A program made the translations under genes and the position numbers. Positions 13,148 to 50,360 of a stretch of DNA of 57,427 bases are shown piece after piece. The DNA is from Octopus bimaculoides (lineage: Eukaryota), in NCBI RefSeq assembly GCF_001194135.2, contig NC_068986.1:102763730-102821156 (forward strand). The letters are read 5' to 3'. Each line of letters starts with the position of its first letter. Position 1 is the first letter of the stretch. The notes beneath the pieces are model-generated. The model had not been told where the DNA came from. It did no database searches and saw nothing but the letters and a program-made list of their open reading frames with translations.

Positions 13148-13743
13148 CATCTACCCGCTAGAAAGAGTAGCAAAAAACTCTATACCACAAAAATAGGGAT
13201 AATTTCGAAAGAGAATGAAAAATAAAAACATTATAGGCATCTCTATATTTTAAATTAATATATATGTAGTCTATTGACTAATTTTTTATTCTCGCTGGAC
13301 CACTGGTGGTAAATTAAATTTTTTAAATTTATTTTGCTGCCCTATGATTAATAATGATATATTTTTTGGCTAATTTCTGAAAGAAAATCGGCATTTGTTT
13401 TACATTTACTGCCGATTAGTTAATGCGCACATGCGTGGTTAATTTTTGGGAAATTAAGCATGTAAGTCTCGAGTCAGGTTCTTACCTTGGCTCGTGTTTA
13501 CACGCTAATCCGGATCTCTGCTGATGAAAGCCCCGGAGTTAGATATAAATTTATCTAGGTAAATAGCTTGAAACCATGGTACAGAGTGTAGACTGGTATA
13601 AATGTTTTTATTTTTCATTCTCTTTCGAAATTATCCCTATTTTTGTGGTATAGAGTTTTTTGCTACTCTTTCTAGCGGGTAGATGTCCTATTATAGGCAT
13701 CTCTATATTTTAAATTAACATATATGTAGTCTATTGACTAATT
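13148..13743 (+). mobile_element. Non-coding HHR-containing retroelement (Penelope pLTR / non-LTR retrozyme-like)
   Basis: 85-bp inverted repeat (13148-13232 vs 13601-13685), 54-bp direct repeat with one mismatch (13230-13283 vs 13690-13743), internal HHR, and (TA)n flanks on both sides. Confidence 0.75.
13496..13593 (+). ncRNA. Type I hammerhead ribozyme, core intact
   Basis: CUCUG-CUGAUGA-AAGC...GCUU-GAAA-CCAUGG-UA-CAGAG. Stem I is 13516-20/13582-86, stem II is 13528-31/13566-69, the cleavage triplet is GUA with predicted cut after 13581, and a distal stem I pairs GUUUACA (13496-502) with UGUAGAC (13587-93). Confidence 0.85.
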
Positions 13744-15147
13744 ATATATATATATATACACAGAGAGATACTGAGAGAGAGAGAAGAGAGAGACCGAGAG
13801 AGAGTGAATGAGAGAGAGGAGAGAGAGAGATACGGGGAACACCAATGCACAGACGGCCGCTATCAAGCAGAGCGCCAGTCGTGATTGAGGCACCATGTTG
13901 ATCCAAACTGCTCTGTGTGGGTCGGAAGCCGACGAGCGGAACATGCTAGGCGGTGCTGCTCAAGGTGTCCCACTAATACGTTCGTGATCATGCCACACTG
14001 GATGGCACCCGATTTCCTTTGAGAGGGCCAGTCGTCTACAGAGAGGAGAGGTGGATATACGTCAGCAGATGCACAGGCTGAGCTGACTCCATGTCACGTA
14101 GTCCACCATGAATTCCCCAAACACACATGGCTCTGCGGGGTTCTGAAGAATGGTTTATATTTGTTTGTATGATTTATGCGTACACTATCCGATTTCCAAA
14201 TGTATATCCGGTAAAAGGCATATTCCTAATGTATGATGGCATATGGAAACCGATAACCGCGGAAGTGCTTTGAAATGCAAGTTATAAGCTTATTACCTAG
14301 ATTATAAATGTCTATGTGTATGTGTGTGCGTGTGTGAGTATATACACACACATATATTTGTATATATGCATTGCATTTGCAGCTGCATATTTTATTGCAA
14401 AGAACGTATCTGTACCACAAATCCTGTTAAGGTGGTTTTCTTGAAACCAGTCACATTTAAAATTGCACTGAAAGGTAATACATGCGCACCATTACGGTGC
14501 TCGACTTTAATCAATTTTATGTGAGGAAGGGTTTACGTCAAACCGAATTACTGCCAATTTTACTGCCAAGAAAATTGCATTTTTCGACAGGACTTATATA
14601 ACGGTTATAAAGATAATTCATTCAAGAGAAGTTTCTTCAGTAACTCTGCGTAAAATAATCATAAGACTGCCTTTCCCGTGAAATCGATGCTGCTGCTTCT
14701 CGTTTCTCAGTGACATAATCAGCATGACTGGTTAATAATTAAATATACAGAGATCGTTCTCAGAGCTTAACTCTGCATACTTCATATTACGGGTAATATT
14801 TATTCGTTGCTGAAGTTTATATGTATATATATATATTTTTTAAATTTTTGTCCAGGTTCATTCAAGATCGGCTTGTGAAATTACAAAATGCGTTCCAAGT
14901 GTCATTATCTTGACATTTATTTAGATAAAGTGCATCTCGAACTTCATTATACATAACGTCACACTATCTCCTTAGCACAGAAGTGCTCGTGGTGACGCAG
15001 TTATCTACTATTTCCCATCACATGAGCGGCGACTGACTGAACCACATGTATCTTCGGGTATGGTGTTTCAAATCTAAAGACATATCATTGATCTGCAGGA
15101 AATGTCATAGGACGGTATGAACACGTAACGAAATATTTAGAAATATT

Positions 15148-15340
15148 GGTGTACGACGACGTGGCTGCGTGGTAAGAGGTTTGCTTCCAAACCAATGGCT
15201 CTGGGTTCAGTCTCACTGCTTGGTACCTTAGGCAAGAGTTGTCTATTATAGACTCGGGCCGACCAATGCCTTTTCAGTGAATTTGGTAAATGAAGGTGGT
15301 AAAAGAAACTGAAAGAAGCCCGTAGTATATATATATATAT
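15148..15340 (+). mobile_element. CORE-like SINE (family B) head and core
   Basis: GTGGCTGCGTGGTAAG...GGGTTCAGTCTCACTG...CCTTAGGCAAG...GAAACTGAAAGAAGCCCGT followed by (TA)n. Confidence 0.85.
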
Positions 15341-17972: not shown

Positions 17973-18124
17973 TTAGTCGAACAAATCGATCCCAGGACTT
18001 ATTCTTTGTAACCCTAGTACTTACCCTGTCGGTTTCTTTTGTGGAACCGCTAGGTAACGGGGAAGTAAACACACCAACATAGGTTGTCAGGCGGTGTTTG
18101 TGGGGACAAATACAGACACACGAC

Positions 18125-18172
<48 letters not shown>

Positions 18173-18312
18173 CGATGGGCTTCTTTCCGTTTCTGTCTAC
18201 TAAATCTACTCACAAGGCTTTGTCAGTCCGATGCCATGGCAGTAGTCACTTGCCCAGAGTACCACACACTGGAACTGAACCCAGAAACATTTGGTTCGGA
18301 AGCAAGCTTCTT
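17973..18312 (-). mobile_element. CORE-like SINE (family B) with internal (CA)n
   Basis: Tail TTAGTCGAACAAATCGA...GGACTTATTCTTTGTAA, then (CA)n(TA)n, core CACTTGCCCA and a B-box region. Confidence 0.85.
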
Positions 18313-18329
18313 TATTTCATTTTATTGGC

Positions 18330-19660
18330 TATGACGGCCTTACACAGAAGAAAAGGGGAAAAAAAGAAAGGAGCTGCGGGTTGGACAAAGACATAATGGT
18401 ATGTGTAATGAAAGTGATAATAATGAATAAATGGGGGGAAACAGCGACGCCCGCCGATTGCTTGATCCCCGAAAACATTGTTCTCATATATGAGGCAACA
18501 AGCCTCTTACAAATGTTCATATTGTTCATGATATCTATCGCTGAAACATATTTGCCTTTCATGCATAACCCTCCTCATCACGTGTGTGTCCGATTCCCAT
18601 CAACGCCCACGCCCTCTCTGGGCACACGTCGAGTGGCGTGTCGGCGTCGCCAGGCACCACGTAAAATATTTCTCTGAAGTCATATAGCTTCTGCACTGTG
18701 TCCCACATTAAGACCTCCACAATTATCTGCGGAGGCCATTCGGGATCCCNNNNNNNNNNGCGGGCACGTTTTCTTTATTCTGCTCCAGGACCTTACCACG
18801 GCCCTGGATGCAGTTCTTTCTAATATGGCCAGGCTCCAGGCACTGGTGACACTTGGCGGGGGGGGGGAGTCCCTCAAGGATCACCGGGTACCTTTGGCCC
18901 GCCATCCTCAGAAAATCTGGGAAAACCAGATCTTTAGTTGATTGGGTCCATATGGTCAACATAGCTTTCGAGCCAACCCAATTAACTGAAGGCAGAATTT
19001 TAACATTAATGAGCCTGGATCCACTACCAACCATCCCCTGGCGGATAGTGTCTTCTATCCACTCAGGCTCTATGCCGGGTGGCAGCCCACAGATCCAAGC
19101 TCGTGTCAGTTTCTTCCCACAGTAAGTGGGGAGAAACAAGATATCCTGCCCTACAATGGGCTGGCTCTCAAATTTGCGAGCCACTTCAGGGGTGTCAAAT
19201 AGCAACCAAATTGTTGCATACTTGGCACCCCTGACTATAAACTTTATGGTGAGGAGATGTTCCGCCAATTCTTTTTCTATATCAGTTTGAGGAAAGACCG
19301 TAATGGTGTCGAGTAACTTGGAGTAAGTCCTCAACACCACCGTTCTTTCCTCCATTTCCCTCATCCATTTTTTGGGTGGGCATAATTCCCACTCCAAGAT
19401 GGTATTTTTTCTTATTGTTCATTGTATTGTTCAACTGTTAGCAGAAAGTCACACAGAAAAAAAGCAGAAGGGAGGACAGAAGAAAGAAAAATAGTTCGGA
19501 TGCAGAAAAAAATCATACAAAAATAGAAAAAAAGAAAAAAAGAACGCAGTTCAAAAGTTCCAACGAACAATTTTCCGGCCACTAGTAATCCAGGCCACAT
19601 GTACACGGAATCCTGCACCTGAATGGCTTCCACAATTTTTTAAAAAAATTAGTAATCGTA
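18330..19660 (-). mobile_element. Tx1/L1-like non-LTR element: 5' UTR plus ORF1, no ORF2 evident
   Basis: T-rich 5' UTR (19400-19660), ORF1 with a CCHC knuckle, and only about 230 bp of sequence after the ORF1 stop. Element boundaries are approximate. Confidence 0.7.
18559..19364 (-). CDS. Retrotransposon ORF1 (gag-like nucleic-acid binding protein with CCHC zinc knuckle), interrupted by a 10-N gap
   Basis: Open frame MREMEERTVVLRTY...WICGLPPGIEPEW...CHQCLEPGHIRKNC (Cx2Cx4Hx4C at 18810-18851). Beyond the gap another open frame DPEWPPQIIVEVLMWDTVQKLYDF...DEEGYA ends at TGA 18561-18559; the gap length is unknown, so the join is inferred. Confidence 0.75.
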
Positions 19661-24657: not shown

Positions 24658-25264
24658 TAAAATTATCATTCTTTTTATGTACACAGTTTTAATAATAAGG
24701 GCACTCAATAGACGCAATCCTCCGCAAAGGCAACACCAACCTCCACTAAATGATTAGTCAGAGACGATTTTTAATATGAGAATAACTGAAATAGACTCGA
24801 CTGCTCTCACAAACAAGAATACTAAAAATGTACCCAACCGTTCTCAAAAATTAAGTAAAATAACAGCAAAAATAATCCAGAATCCTTATCCGGTACCGCA
24901 TCGATCCCAACATCTAAACCGTTCGTGCCAGTCACGCGGCCAAACATCCCTGAAAGTTTTATCTGAATCCATGCAGTGGTTCTTGTGATATCTTGTCCAC
25001 GGACAAATAAACAAACGAATACGACTGAAAACAATACCTTCGCACTTATTAATCTACGTCGCTGTGAGCATGCGTATGCTTTGGTCGTATGAGAATGTGA
25101 GTGTCTGTATATTATTGAGACATTTCTGTATGTATATATATATATATATGTATTTACGTACGTGTGTATCTGCATATCTCCCACTCTGTGTGCATGTGTG
25201 TGTGTGTGTATGTGTGTGTGTGTCTCTGTGTGTGTGTGTCTGTGTGTGTGTGTGTACATATTCT

Positions 25265-25443
25265 CTTATCTGATTCAGTCGGTTGACTGTGGCCATGCAC
25301 GAACAACATTTTACTCGAACAAATTTATCCAAGGACTTATTCTTTGTAAGCCTAGTGCTTATTCTATCGTTTCTTTCTGCCGAACCACTAAGTCGCTGGG
25401 ATATAAACACGCCAGCATCGGTTGTCAAGCGATGATGACGAGA

Positions 25444-25480
<37 letters not shown>

Positions 25481-25630
25481 TTCAGTTTCTGTCTACCAAA
25501 TTTATTCACAAGTCTTTGGTTGGCCAAAAGCTATAGTAGAAAACACTTGCCCAAGGTGCCACGCAGTGGGACTGAACCCGCAACCCCTGTGGTTGTTATG
25601 CATGCTACTTACCACACAGCCACTCTTGCA
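25265..25630 (-). mobile_element. Full-length CORE-like SINE (family B) with internal (CA)n
   Basis: Tail, (CA)n, CACTTGCCCAAGGTGCCACGCAGTGGGACTGAACCC, and head TTACCACACAGCCACTCTTGC. Confidence 0.9.
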
Positions 25631-27849: not shown

Positions 27850-29160
27850 TTACCTTTACAATGTAGAGGCCTATGTATTTAGCTTCTGGAATGATCAACA
27901 ACAATCAGGCAACATAGAAGATCCCCACTTTCTTGGTACCTAGTTTCTATGGTCAGAATATCTTGCTGAAAACTCTCGCCGTGCTTGTCACTGATGGCCA
28001 CAAGATTTGTAGGGAGAAATTCCGAGTGAGAATTCAAGAAGTGGATTTTAGACTCATATTGTATCTCAAGGCGTTGTAAGATGTTCGTAGTTCTTTCACA
28101 ATGTCAGAATAGTTCTCTGTTCCAAGATCCCTCCAAAACTCACTGCAAAATTTCTTAAATGACAGCCACGCAGCTTTTGCAACATCATTGACCTCTTCAC
28201 CACACTCTTGGCCTTTCATCAGTTTTCTTATATGTAGCCCCCCCCCCAAATACCCTCCTTGATTTTGAGTCGTTTACTCTTGAAAATATAGTTTTCAAAA
28301 ACACGAATCTCTTGCAAGTATTATCTATAGCACATTCTATTTTTGTTCCTTATATATAATTTTTTGTAACAGAAACTTCATGCTCTCAGATGATTCTGTT
28401 ATGTTAGCTGCATGGGCCAGTAGAACAGACGGACACCTATCTCCATTGTGGAGTAAAACTGCTTTGAAGCTTCATTTTGACGAGTTAATAAACAAACGCC
28501 ACTAATTCCTGCTATATTTGTGATTAAGTTCTTCCATAACATCGTTACAAAACATCACACCATCTTCAAGTGAGAAAAGGATTTTCAAAATCACAGTGCC
28601 AAGCACTATCAGCACTAACTTTATTCTCTTTCAGGAGAAGGTTCCAGCCCTTTAACCTGAAACCAAGAAGTTCAGCTTGCTTTTTATACAAGTTTAAATC
28701 CCGCAAAAGATCGTTCAGATCTACCTGACTCAACAAATGTGTTCACTTGAAGAATAGTTAGGCTCAAAGTTTATGTCATTACTTGACTCATCGTCACTAA
28801 GTGTCATTTGCTTTGGAGGGCCAGGTACAGATAAGTGTTGTCTGGGAAGTACTGATCTCATAGCAGATTGTAAATTAAGATATTCTACAGTATGCTTGGA
28901 TTTTGATGTTATAACTTGTATATTCGTCAATCATAAGTAGCAATCTGAACTGTGATATTTGACTTCTCTCCAAATCATAGGGATGGCAAAGAGCATATGG
29001 CATGAACATTTGCCCCATGCAGTGAGTAGCCTTATACAGGTTAGACAACACACATGAGGGGCTAAGTTTTCATCCTTGTTCCACAGAGCTGAAGAGATAA
29101 TGTCGCTGTAAATGAGAAATTTACAAAACCCTGAATAGAATGACCACACAACGGACGACC
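27850..29160 (-). mobile_element. Degenerate Chapaev3-like (CMC superfamily) transposase
   Basis: N-terminal APHVCCLTC...FAIPMIWREVKYHSSDCY and C-terminal AAWLSFKKF...NYSDIVKEL...NMSLKIHFLNSHSEFLPTNLVAISDKHGESFQQDI...RYQ. The transposase call is firm; the Chapaev3 name is from recall and needs a search. Confidence 0.7.
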
Positions 29161-29226: not shown

Positions 29227-29244
29227 CATGTATATAAGTATGTA

Positions 29245-29380
29245 TTTGTGTGTCGATGTTTGTCCTACCAATATCGTCTGACAACCGATGTGGGTGTGTT
29301 TATGTACCCCGCTCTACTAAAGGCAGTGCTCCGGCATGGTCGCAGTCAAATGACTGAAACAAGTAAAAGAATAAACGAAT
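29245..29380 (+). mobile_element. SINE family B 3' tail, internally deleted
   Basis: TGACAACCGATGTGGGTGTGTTTATGT...CTAAAGGCAGTGCTCCGGCATGGTCGCAGTCAAATGACTGAAACAAGTAAAAGAATA. Confidence 0.85.
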
Positions 29381-29959
29381 ATATGCACAAGCACACACAC
29401 ATATGACTCATACATAAGCACATACGCACACACACACACGTATAAACACAGACGCATAGAAGCATCTCTCATAAAGAATGAGACAGTGATTCGCCATTGC
29501 TTAGTCAATAAAATCATAGAGAACTCCAAAGTCATGGCGAGATACTTCAGCACAAATTATAAGTGCAGTCGTTATGAATTACTTTTAATATTTCTTCATT
29601 TTATGTATTGCCATCTTGGAAATGCTTGCTAAGTATTCATAACAATGATATCTATATTCTATAAGAAATAAAACTACAAAACATACACAGAAAAGTTTTC
29701 GAAATTGTTGCATCATCTCGTCTTAATACAATTGGAGTGTTCTTGTCACATGGCAAACTTTTGAATATATCTCTCATTAATTTGAGAGATATTTTATGTG
29801 CTGAATTTACCCTGAATCATTATTTCAATTGAAAATGTATTCATTTTGTTATACCCAGTTATGTTTCTAGATTTCCGGAGAAATCTAAAAAGCCGGTTTC
29901 TAACTTAGTTCAAAATCGCCTTCCCCGGAGTTTTAAATAACATGAATTAGGTATGTGCA

Positions 29960-30824: not shown

Positions 30825-31300
30825 TACTCGTTTACTCTTTTACTTGTTTCAGTTATTTGACAGTGGCCATGCTGGAGCACCGGCTTTAGTGGAAGGAATT
30901 TCCCCCAGGACTTATTCGTTGTAAGCCTAGTACTTATTCTATCGGTTTCTTTTGATGAGCCACTAAGCTACGGAGACGTAAACAGACCAGCATCGGTTGA
31001 CAAGCGATGTTGGGGGACAAACACAGACATACAAGAATATATATATATATATATATATACGACAGGCTTCCTTCAGTTTCCGTCTACCAAATCCACTCAC
31101 AAGACTTTGGTCGGCNNNNNNNNNNATATATATATATACGACAGGCTTCCTTCAGTTTCCGTCTACCAAATCCACTCACAAGACTTTGGTCGGCCCGAGG
31201 TTATGGTAGAAGACACTTGCCCAAGGTGCCACGCAATCCAACTGAACTCAGAACCATGTGGTTGGTAAGCAAGCTACTTACCACACAGCCATTCCTGTGT
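30825..31300 (-). mobile_element. Full-length CORE-like SINE (family B), containing a gap-flanking duplication
   Basis: Tail, (TA)n, core and head all present; about 67 bp is repeated on both sides of the 10-N gap. Confidence 0.9.
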
Positions 31301-31409
31301 CTATACATAGACTCACGCACACACACCTTCTCTCTGTCTTTCTATCTATCTCTACCTCTCTCATACACACGTATACATAAATCTATAAATTTTTGTTTTA
31401 TGTGTGAGT

Positions 31410-31610
31410 TTTTTCCACAATATTGTTTAACAACAGATGTTGATGTGTTTATGTTCTCGTAAATTAGCGGTTCGGGTAACGAGAGCGATAAAATAAGTAC
31501 CAGGATTTAAAAAAAATAAGCTCCGGGTTCGATTCAGCGGATTAAAATTCTTCAGGACGGTGTTCCAAGATGGTCACTGTCTAATGAGTGAAGCAAGTAA
31601 GAGGTAAAAG
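31410..31610 (+). mobile_element. Older SINE family B tail
   Basis: GATGTTGATGTGTTTATGTTCTCGTAAATTAGCGGTTCGG...ATAAGTACCAGG. Confidence 0.7.
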
Positions 31611-35404: not shown

Positions 35405-35555
35405 ATTCCAGGTAAAAGAATCATAGGTAAAAGTGTCACAGGAAAAAGGTCACAGGGGTTCTGTCCGGGGATAGTTTTGTCCGAAGGATTTTGTCTTTGT
35501 AGGGTTTTGTCCGCATCCTATGAATTAATTTCCTGTGACTTTACTACCTGTCACC
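35405..35555. repeat. Small inverted-repeat element with internal (GG.TTTTGTCC) repeats
   Basis: GTCACAGGAAA near the left end is complemented by TTTCCTGTGAC near the right end, with four internal TTTTGTC/TTCTGTC units. Confidence 0.5.
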
Positions 35556-35664
35556 ATATATATATATAAGTGTCCGTGTGTATGTGTGTGTGCGTGTGTG
35601 TCTGTGTGTGTTTATGTGTGTTTATGTGTGTATGTATGTTTGTATGTATGTATGTATGTATGTA

Positions 35665-36298
35665 TTGGGTCTTCCCATAAATAATGCGGTTTTTTATAAT
35701 TTTATTTTTCAAAATTAAGATAAACGAATTTCTTTCAAAATCTAAAATATACTCTCCTTCCTTTTCGTCACTGTTCTTCGATCTATCTGGTAGACTTGCA
35801 AGGCCTCTCTTCCAAAATTCGTTTGTCCGTGACGAAAAATACTCCTCCATTACTATTCTGACCTTGTCTACAGAATGCATATGATTATCAGATGGGGCAA
35901 TATCCAGTGAATATGGTGCGTGTGGCATCGTTTCCCATTTAAACTGCTCCAGCCTTTGGAATGTCATCCTCGCTGTATGCGGATGAGCATGTTCCTGATG
36001 GAAGAACTCCTTTTATCTTGAAACCAATGATGGTCGTGTTCCTTCTAGCGCTGATTTAAACCTCTGAATCTGCTCGGAGCAGATCTTGTTTGTTATCGCG
36101 TCGTTGGGGTTTAAAAGTTGAAAGTGACTAAAGCGGTCATATCCCACCAAACAGATAACAATACCTTACGTGGGTGAAAACATACTTTAGCCTGGGATGC
36201 CGATGTTTCTCCTTTCCCAACTCATTGTTTTCGGTGCTTGACATTTTTTATTGAGAACCCATTTCTCGTCATCAGTTACTAATCGAATTATTAACCCT
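35665..36298 (-). mobile_element. mariner 3' half with right TIR
   Basis: TA plus TIR TTGGGTCTTCCCATAAATAATGCGG; minus peptides VTDDEKWVL, VLLSVWWD and HAPYSLDIAPSD. Confidence 0.9.
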
Positions 36299-36302
36299 GA
36301 AT

Positions 36303-37165
36303 TATGAACATGACAAAAAAGAATCTTCGATTATTTTCTTGCATGTCTTCAAGCTTGGGCACCATGCATCTTAAACTGCTGCCAATATCAACACAGCATG
36401 GGGAAAGGTGTCCACAAATGATGGCACAGTACGAAGGTGGTTTCAGAAATCCCGTAATGGATATGACAATCTTGAAGTTGAAGAAGATAGAGGACGGTCA
36501 TGCAGTTTTTACAATGAACAATTGAAAGCAATTGTTGAACAAAACCCACGTCAAAGTCTCAGAGAAATGTCTCAAGCACTTGGTGTCCGTATTGCAACGG
36601 TCTCACGCAATCTGCAGAATACTGGTAAGGTTAAATAAGCTCATAAATGGGTACCACATGAGCTCAATGAAAATCAAAAAGCTCGGCGTCTTGAAGTGTG
36701 CTCGATGCACTTTCTGCGAAACACCAATGATCCTTTTCCTAAGCGAATAGACACCTGCGACAAAAAGTGAATCCTTTATGATTACCGTAAATGATCAGGT
36801 CAATGGCTTGATCGTGATGAGTCCCGCAAACATTTCCCAAAGTTGCATCAGCAAAAGATTATGGTGACTGTCTGGTGATCTGCAATTGGTATTGTCCATT
36901 ACAGCTTCCTGGAAGCCGATCAGAGCATTAGAGAAGAGGTTTACTGCAATCAACTCACTGAAATCCATGCTCACTTTCAAAAAATGAGACCTGCATTGGT
37001 GAATCGGCGTCGCCCAATGCTGCTCCGCAATAATACAAAGCCACATGTTACAAGAATTACGTTCCAAAAACTCACAGACTTGGGATACGAGACTTTAGCA
37101 CATCCTCCATATTCTCCTGATCTTTCATCTACTGACTAGCATTTTATAAGCGTTTAAACACGCTT
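36303..37165 (+). mobile_element. Degenerate mariner transposase (Hsmar1-like), TIRs missing
   Basis: TVRRWFQK...KWVPHELNENQKARRLEVCS...MVTVW...HPPYSPDLSSTD, with several in-frame stops. Confidence 0.92.
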
Positions 37166-38559: not shown

Positions 38560-39030
38560 TATTCTTTTATTCTTTTATTCTTTTATTTGTTTCAGACATT
38601 TTACTGCGGCCATGTTGCAACACCGCCTTTGGTCGAACAAATCGACCCCAGGATTTATTTTGTGTAAACCTAGTACTTATTCTATCAGTTTCTTTTGCCG
38701 AACCACTAATTTACCTGGACATAAACACACAAACACCAGTCGTCAAGCGATGGAGTGGAGACAAAAACATAGACACACACATACAAATACCCCACACGCG
38801 CACACACACACACACACACACACACGCGCACACACACACACACACACACGCACACACATATATATGAAGGGCTTCTTTCAGATTCCGTCTACCAAATCCA
38901 TTCACAAGGATTTGGTCAGCCTGAAGCTTTGATAGACGACACTCGCCCAAGGTACCACGCAGTGAGACTGAACTCGGAAACATGTGGTTGGGAAACAAGC
39001 TTATTACCACTACACAGCCACACCTGCGCT
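38560..39030 (-). mobile_element. Full-length CORE-like SINE (family B) with internal (CA)n
   Basis: ATTCTTTT tail repeats, body, (CA)n, CTCGCCCAAGGTACCACGCAGTGAGACTGAACTC and head. Confidence 0.9.
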
Positions 39031-41295: not shown

Positions 41296-42489
41296 TGGTA
41301 GTGACGGTGGAGGTAATAAGAGTTTTAATTATAGGTGATGTGGTGGTGTTCTATTGGTGATGTTACTGTTGTTGGTTGTTTCTAGGTGTTGCTGTGGCAG
41401 TGGTCATAGCCTTAAACAATTCTCCTCAAAAACAACCGTCCCTATATTTTTTCTCTTTCATCCGTTGATTCCTTTTTGCTTCCCTTTATACGTAAGCGCT
41501 CGCACCTACACAAATACGCAGGTAGACGCACAGACACAGGCACACACACATGCATACATACATACATACATACATACATACATACATACATACATACATA
41601 CATACCTCCGTGTCGTTCTTCCTTCTGTTGTTCTTCACCTCTCCCCTTCACAACTATATATCTCTCTCTTCCGCCCTGTCTCTCGTTGCTCACCCATATT
41701 CTACTCCACACTTTTTTGCTCTCTACCACGCTTTCTCCTTACCCCTCGCTGGTCACATGTGTCCGGCTACTGCTTCTTTTCTTACCTTGGCCACTGCCAA
41801 GCTAGCACGAACTTTCTTCTTCTCTCTTCCTTTCAGTTCGTCACATCAAAACGTTCAGTATACATATATATTTTTTAACGTCTGGCCTTATAACCCTTCT
41901 TGTTTATTTTCACTGTTTCTTTTTCCTGTTGTGTTTTCTGTTCGCCACTATATTCCTCCACATTACAATTTTCTTTTGTTTCCACGAGAAGAGCCATTCT
42001 AACAATGCGTCCTACCCTAACTCTTCGAAACGCTTAATTTTAGAATGATGGCAGCTGATGAAGGAAATGTTCTCTATGTTTGCCTGTGTGTTTTCTATGC
42101 TTTGTTTATGTTATGTTTCTCATTTTGTCCACGTTTTTTTTTGACGTCCTGTACCCAGATATGCAGCTATATATACATGTAGATGTAGGTATGTACATAC
42201 ATATACGTATATATGCATATACTATATACATATATATATATTCTTTTATTCCTTTCTTCATTTACTTATTACAGTCATTTGACTGCGGCCATGCTGCAGC
42301 ACCGCTTTTTAGTCGAACCAATCTACCCCAGAACTTATTCTATGTAAGCGTAGTGTATATTCCATCGTTCTGTTTTGCGTAACTTAGTGGTTCCGCATCA
42401 CCTATAATTAAAACTCTTATTACCTCCACCGTCACTACCAACTACTACTACTACTACTACTACTACTACCACTGCCGCTGCTGCTGCTG

Positions 42490-43344: not shown

Positions 43345-43525
43345 ATATATATATACATATAAATACGACGGGCTTCTTTCAGTTTCCGTCTGCCAAATCC
43401 GCTCACAGGCCTTGGATGGCTCGAGGCCATAGTAAAGACACTTGCCAAGGTGCCATGCAGTGGGACTGAACTCGGAACCATGTGGTTGGGAAACAAGCTT
43501 TTTACCACACAGCCACTCCTGCGCC
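43345..43525 (-). mobile_element. SINE family B head and core (tail in gap)
   Basis: Minus GGCGCAGGAGTGGCTGTGTGGTAAAAAG...GGTTCCGAGTTCAGTCCCACTGCATGGCACCTTGGCAAGTG. Confidence 0.9.
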
Positions 43526-49473: not shown

Positions 49474-50360
49474 ATGCCTAGAAGGAAAGTGTCAAATTTG
49501 TCTACAATGTCAAGGTCAGCCAAATGAATGTCTCTGTTCAGAGAAAGAGAGACAGCTGCAGAAAGGGTAGCACACCAGGAAATGAACTGTCTCTGCACTA
49601 CTATACCAGATTATCTCAAATTGATGGACAGAGGTATGCACGGCTGACATGAATAGGATCTCCACTGCAGAACGAAGAGCAATTGCATCCGTTCAGAGAA
49701 ACAACTATTATGAAGCAGCTTTCAATTATGATCCAACAGTTCATTATGCTGATGACACAAGAGTTTCCATTGGTGCAATGACAACTGTATGCATACATTG
49801 TAAAGCAAGGAAGCGGCCTAGAGAGACACCTGCACTGTGCTGCAGTGGTGGAAAGGTGAAACTCCTTGCAATCCCCCAACATCCAGAGCCATTGAAGAAA
49901 CTGTTGTCATCATGCGACCAAGATTCCAAGCAATTCCAAAGCAAAATTAGACAATACAACGTTGCACTACAGATGACATCATTTGGAGCCACAAGAGATT
50001 TCACTGAGCCAGGATTCAGGCAAATTTTCAAGATCCAAAGTCAGATTTATTATCGGAGTGGCTCTCTACTACCTACCTATGTGAAATGAATCACCAAAAT
50101 CGGTCTTTCATTGTTTATAATCTGTACCTACTTTTTGGTTAAGAAATAAGCTACATAAAATTTTATATACACATATGAGTTGAACACTTTCTTTCAACAT
50201 TTCACTTAACATCTATGTTCCATGCTGGCATGGATTACAGAGTTATTAATATAGAAAGTAGTTATTTCAACCACTAACAGTTGAGACATGCGATATCTAG
50301 ACGGCGTTCTTAAATTTCATATTTGTTTTTAACCCGGGCAACGCCGGATATTTCTGCTAG
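49474..50360 (+). mobile_element. Internally deleted Helitron: Rep N-terminus plus intact 3' terminus
   Basis: ATG at 49474 (MPRRKVSNL.., with stops); ORF 49649-50089 IGAMTTVCIHCKA...LCCSGGKVKL...PEPLKKLL...IRQYNVALQMTSFG...GSLLP; 3' hairpin CCGGGCAACGCCGG, then CTAG ending 50360 followed by T. The 5' end was not located. Confidence 0.92.

What the first reader, a model, noticed from the sequence alone, without database searches (positions are those of the whole stretch)
13496..13593. Intact extended type I hammerhead ribozyme with a candidate bulge-loop pseudoknot
Seen: perfect core CUGAUGA (13521-27) and GAAA (13570-73), a GUA cleavage triplet, stem I CUCUG/CAGAG, stem II AAGC/GCUU enclosing an extra UAGAUA/UAUCUA hairpin, and stem III as the palindrome ACCAUGGU. 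After a 13-nt 5' bulge, stem I continues for 7 bp (GUUUACA/UGUAGAC). The bulge contains UCCGG (13509-13), complementary to CCGGA (13533-37) in the stem II loop. Established: natural HHRs need stem I-loop II tertiary contacts, and short palindromic stem III motifs work as dimers in PLE/retrozyme HHRs. Inference: a probably active ribozyme whose tertiary contact may be a 5-bp Watson-Crick pseudoknot.
Basis: partly seen in the sequence, partly recalled or inferred. Interest (0 to 1): 0.88.

Follow-up and report, generated by a model that had tools for sequence, protein, structure and literature searches.

The report
Retroelement-borne type I hammerhead ribozyme copy
The motif is a real hammerhead self-cleaving RNA of the well-known kind carried by Penelope-like or retrozyme retroelements in animal genomes, here as a single copy in a young 0.6-kb insertion, and its proposed pseudoknot is plausible but unproven.

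Summary
A type I hammerhead (HHR) descriptor hits only this site in the window. A motif this good is expected about 0.001 times per window, but about 33 times per 2-Gb genome, so the motif alone proves little.

Two further lines make it a real, retroelement-derived HHR:
- **A relative.** One metagenome contig (L001) carries two tandem 259-bp repeats, each with a minimal HHR. These share stem I, the unusual A-U/A-U base of helix II and the palindromic helix III with the candidate. Seven matches to the same pattern in bacterial and viral collections are all non-HHR chance hits.
- **The context.** The candidate lies in a 596-bp composite insertion inside a (TA)n microsatellite. It comprises a 460-bp unit, a 54-bp partial tandem copy, and an 85-bp perfect inverted copy of the unit's 3' end. 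This is the published signature of Penelope-like element (PLE) insertions.

There is only one HHR at this locus and no PLE ORF nearby. The closing pair of helix II is A-U rather than G-C. Rfam models miss both this motif and L001. The pseudoknot has modest post hoc statistical support (p about 0.01), no covariation data, and no counterpart in L001. Pseudoknot-stabilised HHRs are already known. Verdict: a new member of a known kind, of low to moderate interest.

The parts
13126..13147 (.). Left flank: AT/TA-rich microsatellite into which the composite insertion is set
   Evidence: Sequence read directly...ATATGTAAATATATATATAT | CATCTACC
13148..13232 (-). Inverted, 5'-truncated copy of the unit's 3' end. 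It is the reverse complement of 13601-13685 and may extend to 13236 / 13596 with one indel.
   Evidence: 85/85 identical as an inverted repeat. It matches the 'inverted 5'-truncated copy adjacent at the 5' end' described for PLE insertions (PMC8557442).
13230..13689 (+). 460-bp non-coding repeat unit that carries the hammerhead. I read it as a non-autonomous PLE-mobilised, retrozyme-like element.
   Evidence: The direct repeat 13230-13283 = 13690-13743 sets the period at 460 bp. No ORF >=80 aa lies between 11018 and 15139.
13496..13502 (+). 5' strand of the outer extension of helix I (GUUUACA)
   Evidence: Pairs with 13587-13593 and is kept in the MFE fold. The chance of such an extension is about 0.14. 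L001 has no equivalent.
13503..13515 (+). 13-nt 5' bulge in helix I (CGCUAAUCCGGAU), holding the pseudoknot candidate CUAAUCCGG (13505-13)
   Evidence: It aligns without gaps to the 5' flank of the L001 HHR, within an 18-nt flank that is 11/18 identical (p = 0.002).
13516..13520 (+). Helix I, 5' strand (CUCUG; positions 2.5-2.1)
   Evidence: Pairs with CAGAG 13582-86. Identical to L001.
13521..13527 (+). Catalytic core box CUGAUGA (C3-A9)
13528..13531 (+). Helix II, 5' strand (AAGC; 10.1-10.4), with an A10.1-U11.1 closing pair
   Evidence: Pairs with GCUU 13566-69. L001 has the same AA...UU base.
13532..13565 (+). 34-nt loop II insert. It contains an internal loop, the hairpin UAGAUA/UAUCUA (13540-45/13552-57), and the pseudoknot partner CCGGA(G)UUAG (13533-42).
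   Evidence: L001 has only a 3-nt loop here.
13566..13569 (+). Helix II, 3' strand (GCUU; 11.4-11.1)
13570..13573 (+). Core box GAAA (G12, A13, A14, A15.1)
13573..13580 (+). Helix III palindrome ACCAUGGU. In a monomer it gives 2 bp plus a CAUG tetraloop. Between two copies it gives an 8-bp shared helix.
   Evidence: The self-duplex energy is -13.2 kcal/mol, and RNAcofold forms this intermolecular helix. L001 has ACCAUAUGGU.
13581..13582 (+). Predicted cleavage site: after A17 (A13581), before C1.1 (C13582)
   Evidence: Follows from the hammerhead numbering and the NUH rule applied to G13579-U13580-A13581. Not tested experimentally.
13582..13586 (+). Helix I, 3' strand (CAGAG; 1.1-1.5)
13587..13593 (+). 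3' strand of the outer helix I extension (UGUAGAC)
13601..13685 (+). 3'-terminal segment of the unit, and the template of the inverted copy at 13148-13232
13690..13743 (+). Partial second tandem copy (first 54 nt of the unit, 53/54 identical), which ends in the microsatellite
13744..13760 (.). Right flank: (AT)n microsatellite followed by (GA)n

Best explanation
The site is a type I hammerhead ribozyme of the animal retroelement class: PLE pseudo-LTR 'min-HHR' or non-LTR retrozyme. It sits in a 460-bp non-coding unit that was copied into a (TA)n microsatellite recently.

**Shown.**
- The motif has all core letters and the three helices.
- A related HHR sits in tandem 259-bp repeats in an unrelated contig.
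- The insertion has the PLE architecture: a more-than-unit-length direct copy plus an inverted 5'-truncated copy, within a TA microsatellite.

**Inferred mechanism.**
- In the parent element, multimeric transcripts fold into hammerheads.
- Two hammerheads pair through the palindromic ACCAUGGU to build one shared 8-bp helix III.
- Each cleaves after A17 (A13581 | C13582), leaving a 2',3'-cyclic phosphate and a 5'-OH.
- Unit-length RNA is circularised by a host tRNA ligase or stays multimeric.
- A PLE reverse transcriptase/GIY-YIG endonuclease supplied in trans primes on the A/U-rich stretch after ...GACUAAUU and copies 514 nt, more than one unit, into the microsatellite.

This particular locus holds only one hammerhead. 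It is most likely a non-propagating 'monomer' offspring. Its ribozyme would cleave weakly, if at all, unless it pairs in trans with another copy.
For: - **Motif.** It is the only descriptor hit in 57 kb on both strands, with 0.0009 expected per window.
- **Relative.** The pattern CTGCTGATGA N12-42 GAAACC N2-8 GGTACAG found one metagenome contig, L001. L001 holds two tandem 259-bp repeats at 91% identity, each with the HHR UGCUCUG-CUGAUGA-A-AACA-UUC-UGUU-GAAA-CC-AUAU-GG-UA-CAGAGCA.
- **Identities not forced by the pattern.** Helix I pairs 4-5 match (CU/AG). The rare AA...UU base of helix II matches. Loop 3 is palindromic in both. The 5' flank is 11/18 identical (p = 0.002).
- **Empirical null.** The same pattern gave 6 hits in 596 Gb of prokaryotic genomes and 1 hit in viral contigs. 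None of them has more than 1 extra helix I pair, more than 3 helix II pairs, or a palindromic loop 3.
- **One-sided change in L001.** Copy 2 has C15.3 changed to U, which keeps the pair as U.G.
- **Context.** There is an 85/85 inverted copy of the unit's 3' end at the 5' side, a 53/54 partial tandem copy at the 3' side, and TA-type repeats (AT/TA-rich on the left, (AT)n on the right) on both flanks. These are the features published for PLE insertions (PMC8557442). The near-identity implies a recent event.
- **Literature fit.** Short palindromic helix III, dimer dependence, mostly solo copies, and tandem or inverted arrangements are all described (PMC4209133). Retrozyme units range from 51 to 972 bp, and monomer derivatives are common (bioRxiv 10.64898/2026.07.22.740005).
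Against: - There is no second copy of the unit or the HHR in the window, and no PLE RT or GIY-YIG ORF nearby.
- The source genome could not be searched, so family size and covariation are unknown.
- A10.1-U11.1 replaces the G10.1-C11.1 pair that PLE min-HHRs conserve. The unpaired nucleotide after A9 that is typical of them is present in L001 but not here.
- No Rfam hammerhead model hits, even at E <= 10 on 111 nt.
- The nearest-neighbour MFE is a different fold, 7-10 kcal/mol more stable.
- L001 was retrieved with a pattern taken from the candidate. The 22.6-bit, E = 0.0012 hit of the L001-trained covariance model is therefore partly by construction.
- Beyond the HHR and its 5' flank, the two units share no significant similarity.
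- The perfect inverted repeat lies in a gap-rich draft scaffold and could be an assembly artefact.
Confidence: 0.72

Rival explanations
1. The motif is a self-sufficient, fast 'extended' type I hammerhead. Its active fold is locked by a Watson-Crick pseudoknot between the helix I bulge (UCCGG, possibly CUAAUCCGG) and the enlarged loop II (CCGGA, possibly CCGGA-G-UUAG).
For: - The complementarity is real. In its extended 9-bp form it is stronger than 99% of shuffles.
- Its position is where stem I / loop II contacts sit in canonical HHRs: 5 bp up helix I and 4 bp plus 1 nt up helix II.
- Pseudoknots of 4-6 bp are a proven tertiary lock in HHRs of all three types (PMC3088659).
- Adding about -7 kcal/mol for the 5-bp helix would bring the hammerhead fold close to the MFE.
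Against: - There are no homologues carrying the insert, so there is no covariation.
- The only relative, L001, lacks the loop II insert, the bulge and the outer stem.
- The same helix is part of the nested, non-catalytic MFE fold that buries CUGAUGA in a hairpin loop.
- The 9-bp version competes with the UAGAUA hairpin.
- TCCGGA is itself a palindrome, so it could pair bulge-to-bulge between two copies just as well.
- The p-value is post hoc.
- The A10.1-U11.1 pair and the 2-bp monomeric helix III argue against fast monomeric cleavage.
Confidence: 0.15
2. The motif is a hammerhead relic that no longer works. It descends from a retroelement HHR, but the 30-nt insertion in loop II, the loss of two loop 3 nucleotides, and the alternative fold have inactivated it. 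The bulge/loop II helix is then an accident, or an 'off' conformer.
For: - The MFE fold is not the hammerhead and is 7-10 kcal/mol more stable.
- Relative to L001, helix II is interrupted by an 8 x 8 internal loop, and helix III is reduced to 2 bp plus a tetraloop in the monomer.
- PLE min-HHRs are barely active even when intact.
- It is a solo copy.
Against: - All 11 invariant core letters, the NUH site and the three helices are intact.
- The insertion is young (85/85 and 53/54 identity), so there has been little time for decay at this locus.
- Any changes relative to L001 belong to the family, not to this copy.
Confidence: 0.25
3. The motif is a chance match to the hammerhead consensus in AT-rich intergenic DNA. 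Its resemblance to L001 and to PLE architecture would be coincidental or an assembly artefact.
For: - About 33 motifs of this quality are expected per 2-Gb genome under a Markov model.
- Rfam does not call it.
- The fold z-score is -1.6.
- The scaffold is a draft with 17 N gaps.
Against: - Only 0.0009 such motifs are expected in this window.
- The unforced identities to a bona fide tandem HHR are jointly very improbable: helix I pairs 4-5, the rare A-U/A-U helix II base, the palindromic loop 3, and the 11/18 5' flank. All 7 control hits lack these features.
- The motif also sits in a structure typical of PLE insertions.
Confidence: 0.06
4. The motif is a box C/D snoRNA-like element. UGAUGA would be box C, closed by the terminal stem.
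For: Weak C/D snoRNA model hits appear on the equivalent L001 sequence because of UGAUGA. A weak H/ACA (SNORA72) hit, also a snoRNA model, appears just upstream in the window.
Against: There is no box D (CUGA) near the 3' strand of the stem. All scores are far below gathering thresholds (7-17 bits against 36-50). Nothing is returned on 13490-13600.
Confidence: 0.01

Closest known systems
Minimal hammerheads (min-HHRs) in the pseudo-LTRs of Penelope-like elements (Cervera & de la Pena 2014, PMC4209133)
   Same: - Type I topology.
[quoted passage not shown]
- Palindromic 15.2-16.2 pair and loop 3, implying action as a dimer.
- Mostly solo genomic copies, sometimes tandem or inverted.
- The insertion architecture (partial tandem, inverted 5'-truncated copy, TA microsatellite target) matches PLEs (PMC8557442).
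   Different: - A10.1-U11.1 replaces the conserved G-C.
- There is no unpaired nucleotide between A9 and 10.1 here, although L001 has one.
- Helix II is 4 bp, then an 8 x 8 internal loop, then a 6-bp hairpin, instead of a continuous 6-8 bp.
- No PLE ORF is within reach.
Metazoan non-LTR retrozymes (Cervera & de la Pena 2020, PMC7229834; Li et al. 2026 preprint)
   Same: - Non-coding, AT-rich unit within the 51-972 bp range that carries a type I HHR.
- A more-than-unit-length copy, consistent with a circular or multimeric RNA template.
- Monomer derivatives are common.
- The relative L001 is a true tandem dimer with a 259-bp unit.
   Different: - Only 1.12 units and one HHR are present here, so this locus cannot release a unit-length or circular RNA by itself.
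- The published mussel and coral retrozyme HHRs read here have G10.1-C11.1 and GUC sites, unlike this one.
Canonical metazoan type I hammerheads (newt satellite 2, Schistosoma Sm-alpha, axolotl HHR_Amex1/2)
   Same: Helix II is 4 bp. A helix I bulge or loop is placed about 5-6 bp from the core. Helix III is very weak and capped by a palindromic tetraloop, with dimer-dependent cleavage.
   Different: The conserved loop 1 / loop 2 tertiary nucleotides are not recognisable. Loop II is 34 nt. The cleavage triplet is GUA. The closing pair is A-U.
Pseudoknot-stabilised hammerheads (Perreault et al. 2011, PMC3088659), for example the human C10orf118 intronic HHR with a 5-bp pseudoknot
   Same: If the proposed contact is real, it would be a 5-bp Watson-Crick helix linking the stem I and stem II peripheries.
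   Different: There the pseudoknot is supported by covariation and mutagenesis. Here it is supported only by a post hoc energy statistic, and it is absent from the one relative found.
Rfam Hammerhead_1 (RF00163) and the other Rfam hammerhead models
   Same: Same core consensus and three-helix junction.
   Different: No match was returned at E <= 10, even on 111 nt. The tandem L001 HHRs are missed as well, so this subclass lies outside what those models detect at these thresholds.

Membership tests
Hammerhead ribozyme (type I) | Core box C3-U4-G5-A6-N7-G8-A9 | tested here: met
   CUGAUGA at 13521-27
Hammerhead ribozyme (type I) | Core box G12-A13-A14 plus the A15.1-U16.1 pair, and a cleavable N-U-H triplet | tested here: met
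   GAAA at 13570-73, A13573-U13580, and triplet G-U-A at 13579-81
Hammerhead ribozyme (type I) | Three helices around the core in type I order, with helix I open | tested here: met
   Helix I 5 bp, helix II 4 bp, helix III A-U plus 1-2 bp. This is the only descriptor hit in the window.
Hammerhead ribozyme (type I) | G10.1-C11.1 closing pair of helix II (highly conserved) | tested here: not met
   A13528-U13569. The relative L001 also has A-U. Conservation is stated in PMC4209133.
Hammerhead ribozyme (type I) | Tertiary contact between the helix I and helix II peripheries | tested here: inconclusive
   Candidate pseudoknot 13505-13 x 13533-42, -11.7 kcal/mol, p about 0.005-0.01. There is no covariation, L001 lacks it, and the same helix is used by the competing MFE fold.
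Hammerhead ribozyme (type I) | Match to the curated covariance model (Rfam RF00163 or another hammerhead model) at the gathering score | tested here: not met
   No hammerhead hit at gathering or at E <= 10. The models also miss the tandem L001 HHRs, so sensitivity for this subclass is poor.
Hammerhead ribozyme (type I) | Mg2+-dependent self-cleavage at the predicted site | not testable with these tools
   Needs in vitro transcription or end-mapping of cellular RNA.
Hammerhead ribozyme (type I) | Covariation of the helices among homologues | tested here: inconclusive
   Only L001 is available (2 near-identical copies). There is one one-sided change, C-G to U.G, in helix III. Helix II differs in register between L001 and the window.
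PLE pseudo-LTR min-HHR | Palindromic 15.2-16.2 pair and loop 3 (dimeric helix III) | tested here: met
   ACCAUGGU is a perfect palindrome with a self-duplex energy of -13.2 kcal/mol. The intermolecular helix is predicted by cofold.
PLE pseudo-LTR min-HHR | Unpaired nucleotide between A9 and 10.1, and a long (6-8 bp) helix II | tested here: not met
   The best register here has no bulge and gives 4 bp followed by an internal loop. L001 does have the bulged A.
PLE pseudo-LTR min-HHR | Location in the terminal repeat of an element encoding RT plus a GIY-YIG endonuclease | tested here: not met
   No ORF >=80 aa lies between 11018 and 15139. Window ORFs give only a LINE-type RVT_1 fragment, Tc1/mariner domains and a Helitron-like ORF.
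PLE pseudo-LTR min-HHR | PLE-type insertion architecture: partial tandem, inverted 5'-truncated copy at the 5' end, microsatellite target | tested here: met
   13148-13232 is the reverse complement of 13601-13685 (85/85). 13690-13743 equals 13230-13283 (53/54). TA-type repeats lie on both flanks: AT/TA-rich on the left, (AT)n on the right. The criteria come from PMC8557442.
Non-LTR retrozyme | Two or more tandem units, each with a type I HHR, able to release a unit-length or circular RNA | tested here: not met
   There are 1.12 units and one HHR. L001 meets this criterion, with two HHRs 259 bp apart.
Non-LTR retrozyme | Multicopy family in the host genome, expressed as linear and circular RNA | not testable with these tools
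   The source genome and transcriptome are not in any searchable collection here.

The most novel reading that the evidence does not exclude
A lineage of PLE/retrozyme hammerheads with an A-U/A-U helix II base has acquired a 30-nt loop II insert. This insert base-pairs over 5-9 bp with a helix I bulge. The pairing either turns a dimer-dependent minimal hammerhead into a self-sufficient monomeric ribozyme, or acts as a conformational switch between a sequestered 'off' hairpin and the pseudoknotted 'on' fold. That would be a natural example of how peripheral tertiary locks are gained by retroelement ribozymes.
Probability: 0.15. Interest if true: 0.5.

Novelty: new member of a known kind. Interest (0 to 1): 0.3.

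Why it matters
Type I hammerheads in Penelope-like elements and retrozymes are already known in thousands of copies in many animal genomes, so one more copy changes little. There are three modest points of interest.

- This subclass has an A10.1-U11.1 pair and very short helices. It is invisible to the Rfam hammerhead models, so genome annotations based on Rfam undercount such ribozymes.
- The locus is a clean, young example of a more-than-unit-length copy with an inverted 5'-truncated partner. This bears on the debated rolling-circle or multimer template model for PLE and retrozyme mobilisation.
- If the bulge/loop II helix is functional, it would show how a minimal dimeric hammerhead gains a tertiary lock or switch.

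Tried and rejected
- **Rfam cmscan.** I ran it at gathering on the whole window and at E <= 10 on 301 nt and 111 nt. It gave no hammerhead hit. I rejected this as evidence against, because the tandem L001 hammerheads are also missed.
- **Near-exact pattern in metagenome contigs.** It returned nothing.
- **A 28-base family pattern in prokaryotic genomes and viral contigs.** It returned nothing.
- **The looser pattern in the same two collections.** It gave only chance hits, which I used as a null.
- **Finding repeat copies through spurious ORFs that overlap the HHR.** Exact look-ups of the 37-aa and 33-aa window ORFs and a homology search with the 95-aa L001 ORF found nothing.
- **Reaching more sequence of the source genome through transposon proteins.** The Helitron-like ORF found no relative above 54% identity. 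Exact look-ups of two window ORFs were not on record. The host species therefore remains unidentified. A cephalopod-like repeat landscape is only my recollection, not a test.
- **Homology between the units outside the HHR.** The local alignment was not significant (score 48 against a shuffle mean of 36.6, sd 5.2).
- **A broader metazoan HHR covariance model.** The MAFFT alignment of L001, coral and mussel HHRs was wrong, so I abandoned it. The model built from L001 alone finds the candidate as the top hit (22.6 bits, E = 0.0012). That result is partly circular, because L001 was found with a pattern taken from the candidate.
- **Energy of the double hammerhead.** It cannot be computed with a nested model.
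- **C/D snoRNA reading.** I rejected it because there is no D box.
Full report
**The observation.**
- Core boxes: CUGAUGA at 13521-27 and GAAA at 13570-73.
- Helix II: AAGC 13528-31 with GCUU 13566-69, enclosing a 34-nt insert that contains the hairpin UAGAUA/UAUCUA.
- Helix III and cleavage site: the palindrome ACCAUGGU at 13573-80, the triplet G-U-A ending at A13581.
- Helix I: CUCUG 13516-20 with CAGAG 13582-86, then a 13-nt 5' bulge and an outer 7-bp stem (13496-502 with 13587-93).
- Proposed pseudoknot: UCCGG 13509-13 opposite CCGGA 13533-37.

**How far this exceeds chance.**
- I wrote a type I descriptor requiring helix I >=4 bp, helix II >=3, helix III >=1 beyond A15.1-U16.1, and loop II up to 60 nt. 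This is the only hit on either strand of the 57-kb window.
- Importance sampling under a first-order Markov model of the window gives 0.0009 expected motifs of at least this quality per window. It gives about 33 per 2-Gb genome. The motif is therefore unlikely for one window but not decisive for a large genome.
An outer 7-bp stem after a bulge arises in 14% of shuffles, and a 5-bp Watson-Crick match between bulge and loop II in 17-22%.
- RNAduplex shows the complementarity is longer than reported. CUAAUCCGG (13505-13) pairs with CCGGA-G-UUAG (13533-42), giving 9 bp with one bulged G at -11.7 kcal/mol. Only 0.5-1% of shuffles or window samples reach this. That figure is post hoc.
- Thermodynamically the hammerhead secondary structure (-12.6 kcal/mol, or -15.2 when optimised under constraint) loses to an MFE fold of -22.2 kcal/mol. 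The MFE fold keeps the outer stem, the hairpin and the UCCGG/CCGGA helix, but as a nested helix that buries CUGAUGA in a loop. The z-score is only -1.6.

**Rfam.** No family reaches its gathering score anywhere in the window. No hammerhead model is reported at E <= 10 on 301 nt or on 111 nt. I do not count this against the motif. The same models also miss the two tandem hammerheads of L001, even when only 86 nt are searched.

**A relative.** The window is a draft eukaryotic scaffold with 17 N gaps, abundant TA/TG/CA microsatellites, and transposon debris. None of the searchable DNA collections holds its genome.
- A near-exact pattern found nothing in the metagenome contigs.
- A looser pattern, CTGCTGATGA N12-42 GAAACC N2-8 GGTACAG, found one contig, JAAUYG010307604.1 (L001).
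- On its minus strand, L001 carries two tandem copies of a 259-bp repeat at 91% identity. Each contains UGCUCUG-CUGAUGA-A-AACA-UUC-UGUU-GAAA-CC-AUAU-GG-UA-CAGAGCA.
- That is a 7-bp helix I, a 4-bp helix II preceded by one unpaired A, and a 3-bp helix III with a palindromic AUAU loop. This is the minimal architecture described for PLE hammerheads (PMC4209133).
- Copy 2 carries C15.3 changed to U, which keeps the pair as U.G.
- Several identities to the window were not forced by the pattern: helix I pairs 4 and 5 (CU/AG), the unusual A-U, A-U base of helix II, a palindromic AU-type loop 3, and 11 of 18 ungapped positions in the 5' flank (binomial p = 0.002).
- As an empirical null, the same pattern gave six hits in 596 Gb of prokaryotic genomes and one in viral contigs. 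All seven have at most 1 additional helix I pair, at most 3 helix II pairs and a non-palindromic loop 3.
- L001 shares no other repeat with the window and has a different GC content, 43% against about 33%. It is probably from another organism. Outside the hammerhead and its 5' flank, the two units are not significantly similar.
- A covariance model built only from the two L001 copies ranks the candidate first in the window (22.6 bits, E = 0.0012, next hit 14.6 bits). This is partly circular, because L001 was fished with a pattern taken from the candidate.

**Context.** A self-comparison of 12.5-14.7 kb shows that the hammerhead sits in a composite insertion spanning 13148-13743.
- 13230-13283 is repeated directly at 13690-13743 (53/54 identical). 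This defines a 460-bp unit (13230-13689) followed by a 54-bp partial second copy.
- 13148-13232 is a perfect (85/85) inverted copy of 13601-13685, the 3' end of the unit. It lies immediately 5' of the unit.
- The whole structure is embedded in TA-type repeats: AT/TA-rich sequence on the left, (AT)n then (GA)n on the right.
- Craig et al. describe exactly this for Penelope-like elements: partial tandems forming pseudo-LTRs, an inverted 5'-truncated copy adjacent at the 5' end, a bias for microsatellite targets including (TA)n, and resulting trouble for short-read assemblies (PMC8557442).
- The near-identity of the repeats implies a recent event, or else an assembly artefact.
- The direct part is 514 nt, more than one unit. 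The template therefore must have been multimeric or circular, as the PLE/retrozyme model proposes (PMC4209133; PMC7229834).
- I infer that priming occurred at the A/U-rich stretch after ...GACUAAUU, by microhomology with the (TA)n target.
- There is no ORF of 80 aa or more between 11018 and 15139. None of the window's ORFs has a PLE-type domain. The unit is therefore non-autonomous.
- The window holds no second copy of the unit or of the hammerhead.

**Most likely mechanism.** The family's transcripts fold into hammerheads that cleave after A17, leaving a 2',3'-cyclic phosphate and a 5'-OH.
- Helix III is only A-U plus C-G with a CAUG tetraloop in a monomer, whereas ACCAUGGU is a perfect palindrome. 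Two hammerheads, from adjacent units or in trans, can form one shared 8-bp helix III (-13.2 kcal/mol). This is the double-hammerhead mode known for newt, axolotl and PLE motifs.
- Unit-length RNA would then be ligated by a host tRNA ligase and reverse-transcribed by a PLE enzyme in trans (inferred from the literature).
- The copy in this window has one hammerhead only. It is best seen as a 'monomer' offspring, a common class, that cannot release a unit-length RNA by itself.
- Activity is uncertain. The closing pair of helix II is A-U rather than the conserved G-C. Published min-HHRs cleave poorly in vitro even as dimers.

**The pseudoknot.**
- It is geometrically reasonable. The bulge starts 5 bp up helix I, and the partner starts 1 nt beyond the 4-bp helix II. 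It is energetically non-trivial.
- Watson-Crick pseudoknots between stems I and II are proven in many hammerheads of all three types, including a 5-bp one in a human intronic HHR (PMC3088659). The idea is therefore plausible but would not be a new principle.
- Against it: there are no homologues with the insert; the one relative lacks the insert, bulge and outer stem; the same helix stabilises the non-catalytic MFE fold, so it could equally be an 'off' conformer; the 9-bp version competes with the loop II hairpin; and TCCGGA is itself a palindrome that could pair bulge-to-bulge between two copies.
- I put the pseudoknot-locked monomer reading at about 0.15.

**Comparison and novelty.**
- The motif works like, and almost certainly descends from, the type I hammerheads of PLE pseudo-LTRs and non-LTR retrozymes.
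- It meets the core, helix-order, NUH and palindromic helix III criteria, and the PLE insertion-architecture criterion.
- It fails the G10.1-C11.1 criterion, the unpaired-nucleotide/long helix II criterion, the 'two or more tandem HHRs' criterion for retrozymes, and the Rfam score criterion.
- I therefore file it as a new member, in an A-U/A-U helix II lineage, of a known kind. It is not a new kind.
- Cephalopod and other invertebrate genomes are already known to hold both Penelope elements and Rfam-detectable hammerheads (PMC6962438). I could not establish the species of this window.

**Verdict.** Confidence that this is a genuine retroelement-derived hammerhead is about 0.7. Confidence that it is a fast, pseudoknot-locked monomeric ribozyme is about 0.15, and that it is pure chance about 0.06. 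Interest is 0.3.

Noticed in passing
window 15181-15332(-), 17973-18307, 25259-25595, 29241-29381(-), 30825-31274, 31408-31534(-), 38561-39000, 42240-42378, 43355-43498: An interspersed repeat of about 430 bp with an internal (CA)n tract is present in at least 8 copies on both strands at 69-85% identity. It looks SINE-like, but there is no tRNA, 5S or 7SL hit. From memory it resembles abundant cephalopod repeats; this was not tested.
   Followed up: partly
window 49625-50086 (+): A 154-aa ORF is similar to the N-terminal region of Helitron proteins. Its best hits are named 'Helitron helicase-like domain-containing protein', at up to 54% identity, mostly from arthropods and rotifers. No Pfam domain was found.
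   Followed up: partly
window 10316-10588 (+), 35554-36012 (-), 36375-36635 (+), 36879-37136 (+): These are Tc1/mariner transposase fragments with DDE_3, HTH_32 and Transposase_1 hits. The 36.4-37.1 kb copy is split across reading frames. The 35.6-36.0 kb piece gave no Pfam hit and is mariner-like by eye only.
   Followed up: partly
window 3-335 (-) and 18726-19418 (-): There is a LINE-type reverse transcriptase fragment at the window edge (weak RVT_1 hit). There is also a 231-aa ORF with a CCHC zinc-knuckle-like motif, interrupted by an N gap, with no Pfam hit.
   Followed up: no
window 10040-10082: A 43-nt hairpin-forming inverted repeat, CTGATGAAA...TTTCATCAG, produced several spurious CTGATGA...GAAA pattern matches. 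It lies about 230 bp upstream of the Tc1-like fragment.
   Followed up: no
window 27966-28040 (+): A relaxed hammerhead descriptor also hits here, with a CUGAAAA core. That core puts A at position 8 without the compensating U3, so the hit is probably chance.
   Followed up: no
window 13505-13514 and 13532-13542: TCCGGA (13509-14) is itself a palindrome, and CCGG occurs twice within 30 nt in otherwise AT-rich, CpG-poor sequence. Bulge-to-bulge kissing between two copies is therefore as possible as the bulge/loop II pairing.
   Followed up: partly
window 13596-13601 relative to 13581/13582: The inverted 5'-truncated copy starts 15-20 nt downstream of the predicted cleavage site, just past the outer stem. 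This would fit a cDNA made on a hammerhead-cleaved 3' fragment, but it may be coincidence.
   Followed up: no
L001 2634-3196: L001 has a second tandem repeat with a period of about 351 bp and 78-83% identity between copies. My descriptor found no hammerhead in it.
   Followed up: partly
window, whole: The scaffold is a draft, with 17 runs of N (10-889 nt), often next to microsatellites. Several long 'ORFs' and 'repeats' reported by the mechanical tools are N runs or microsatellites.
   Followed up: yes
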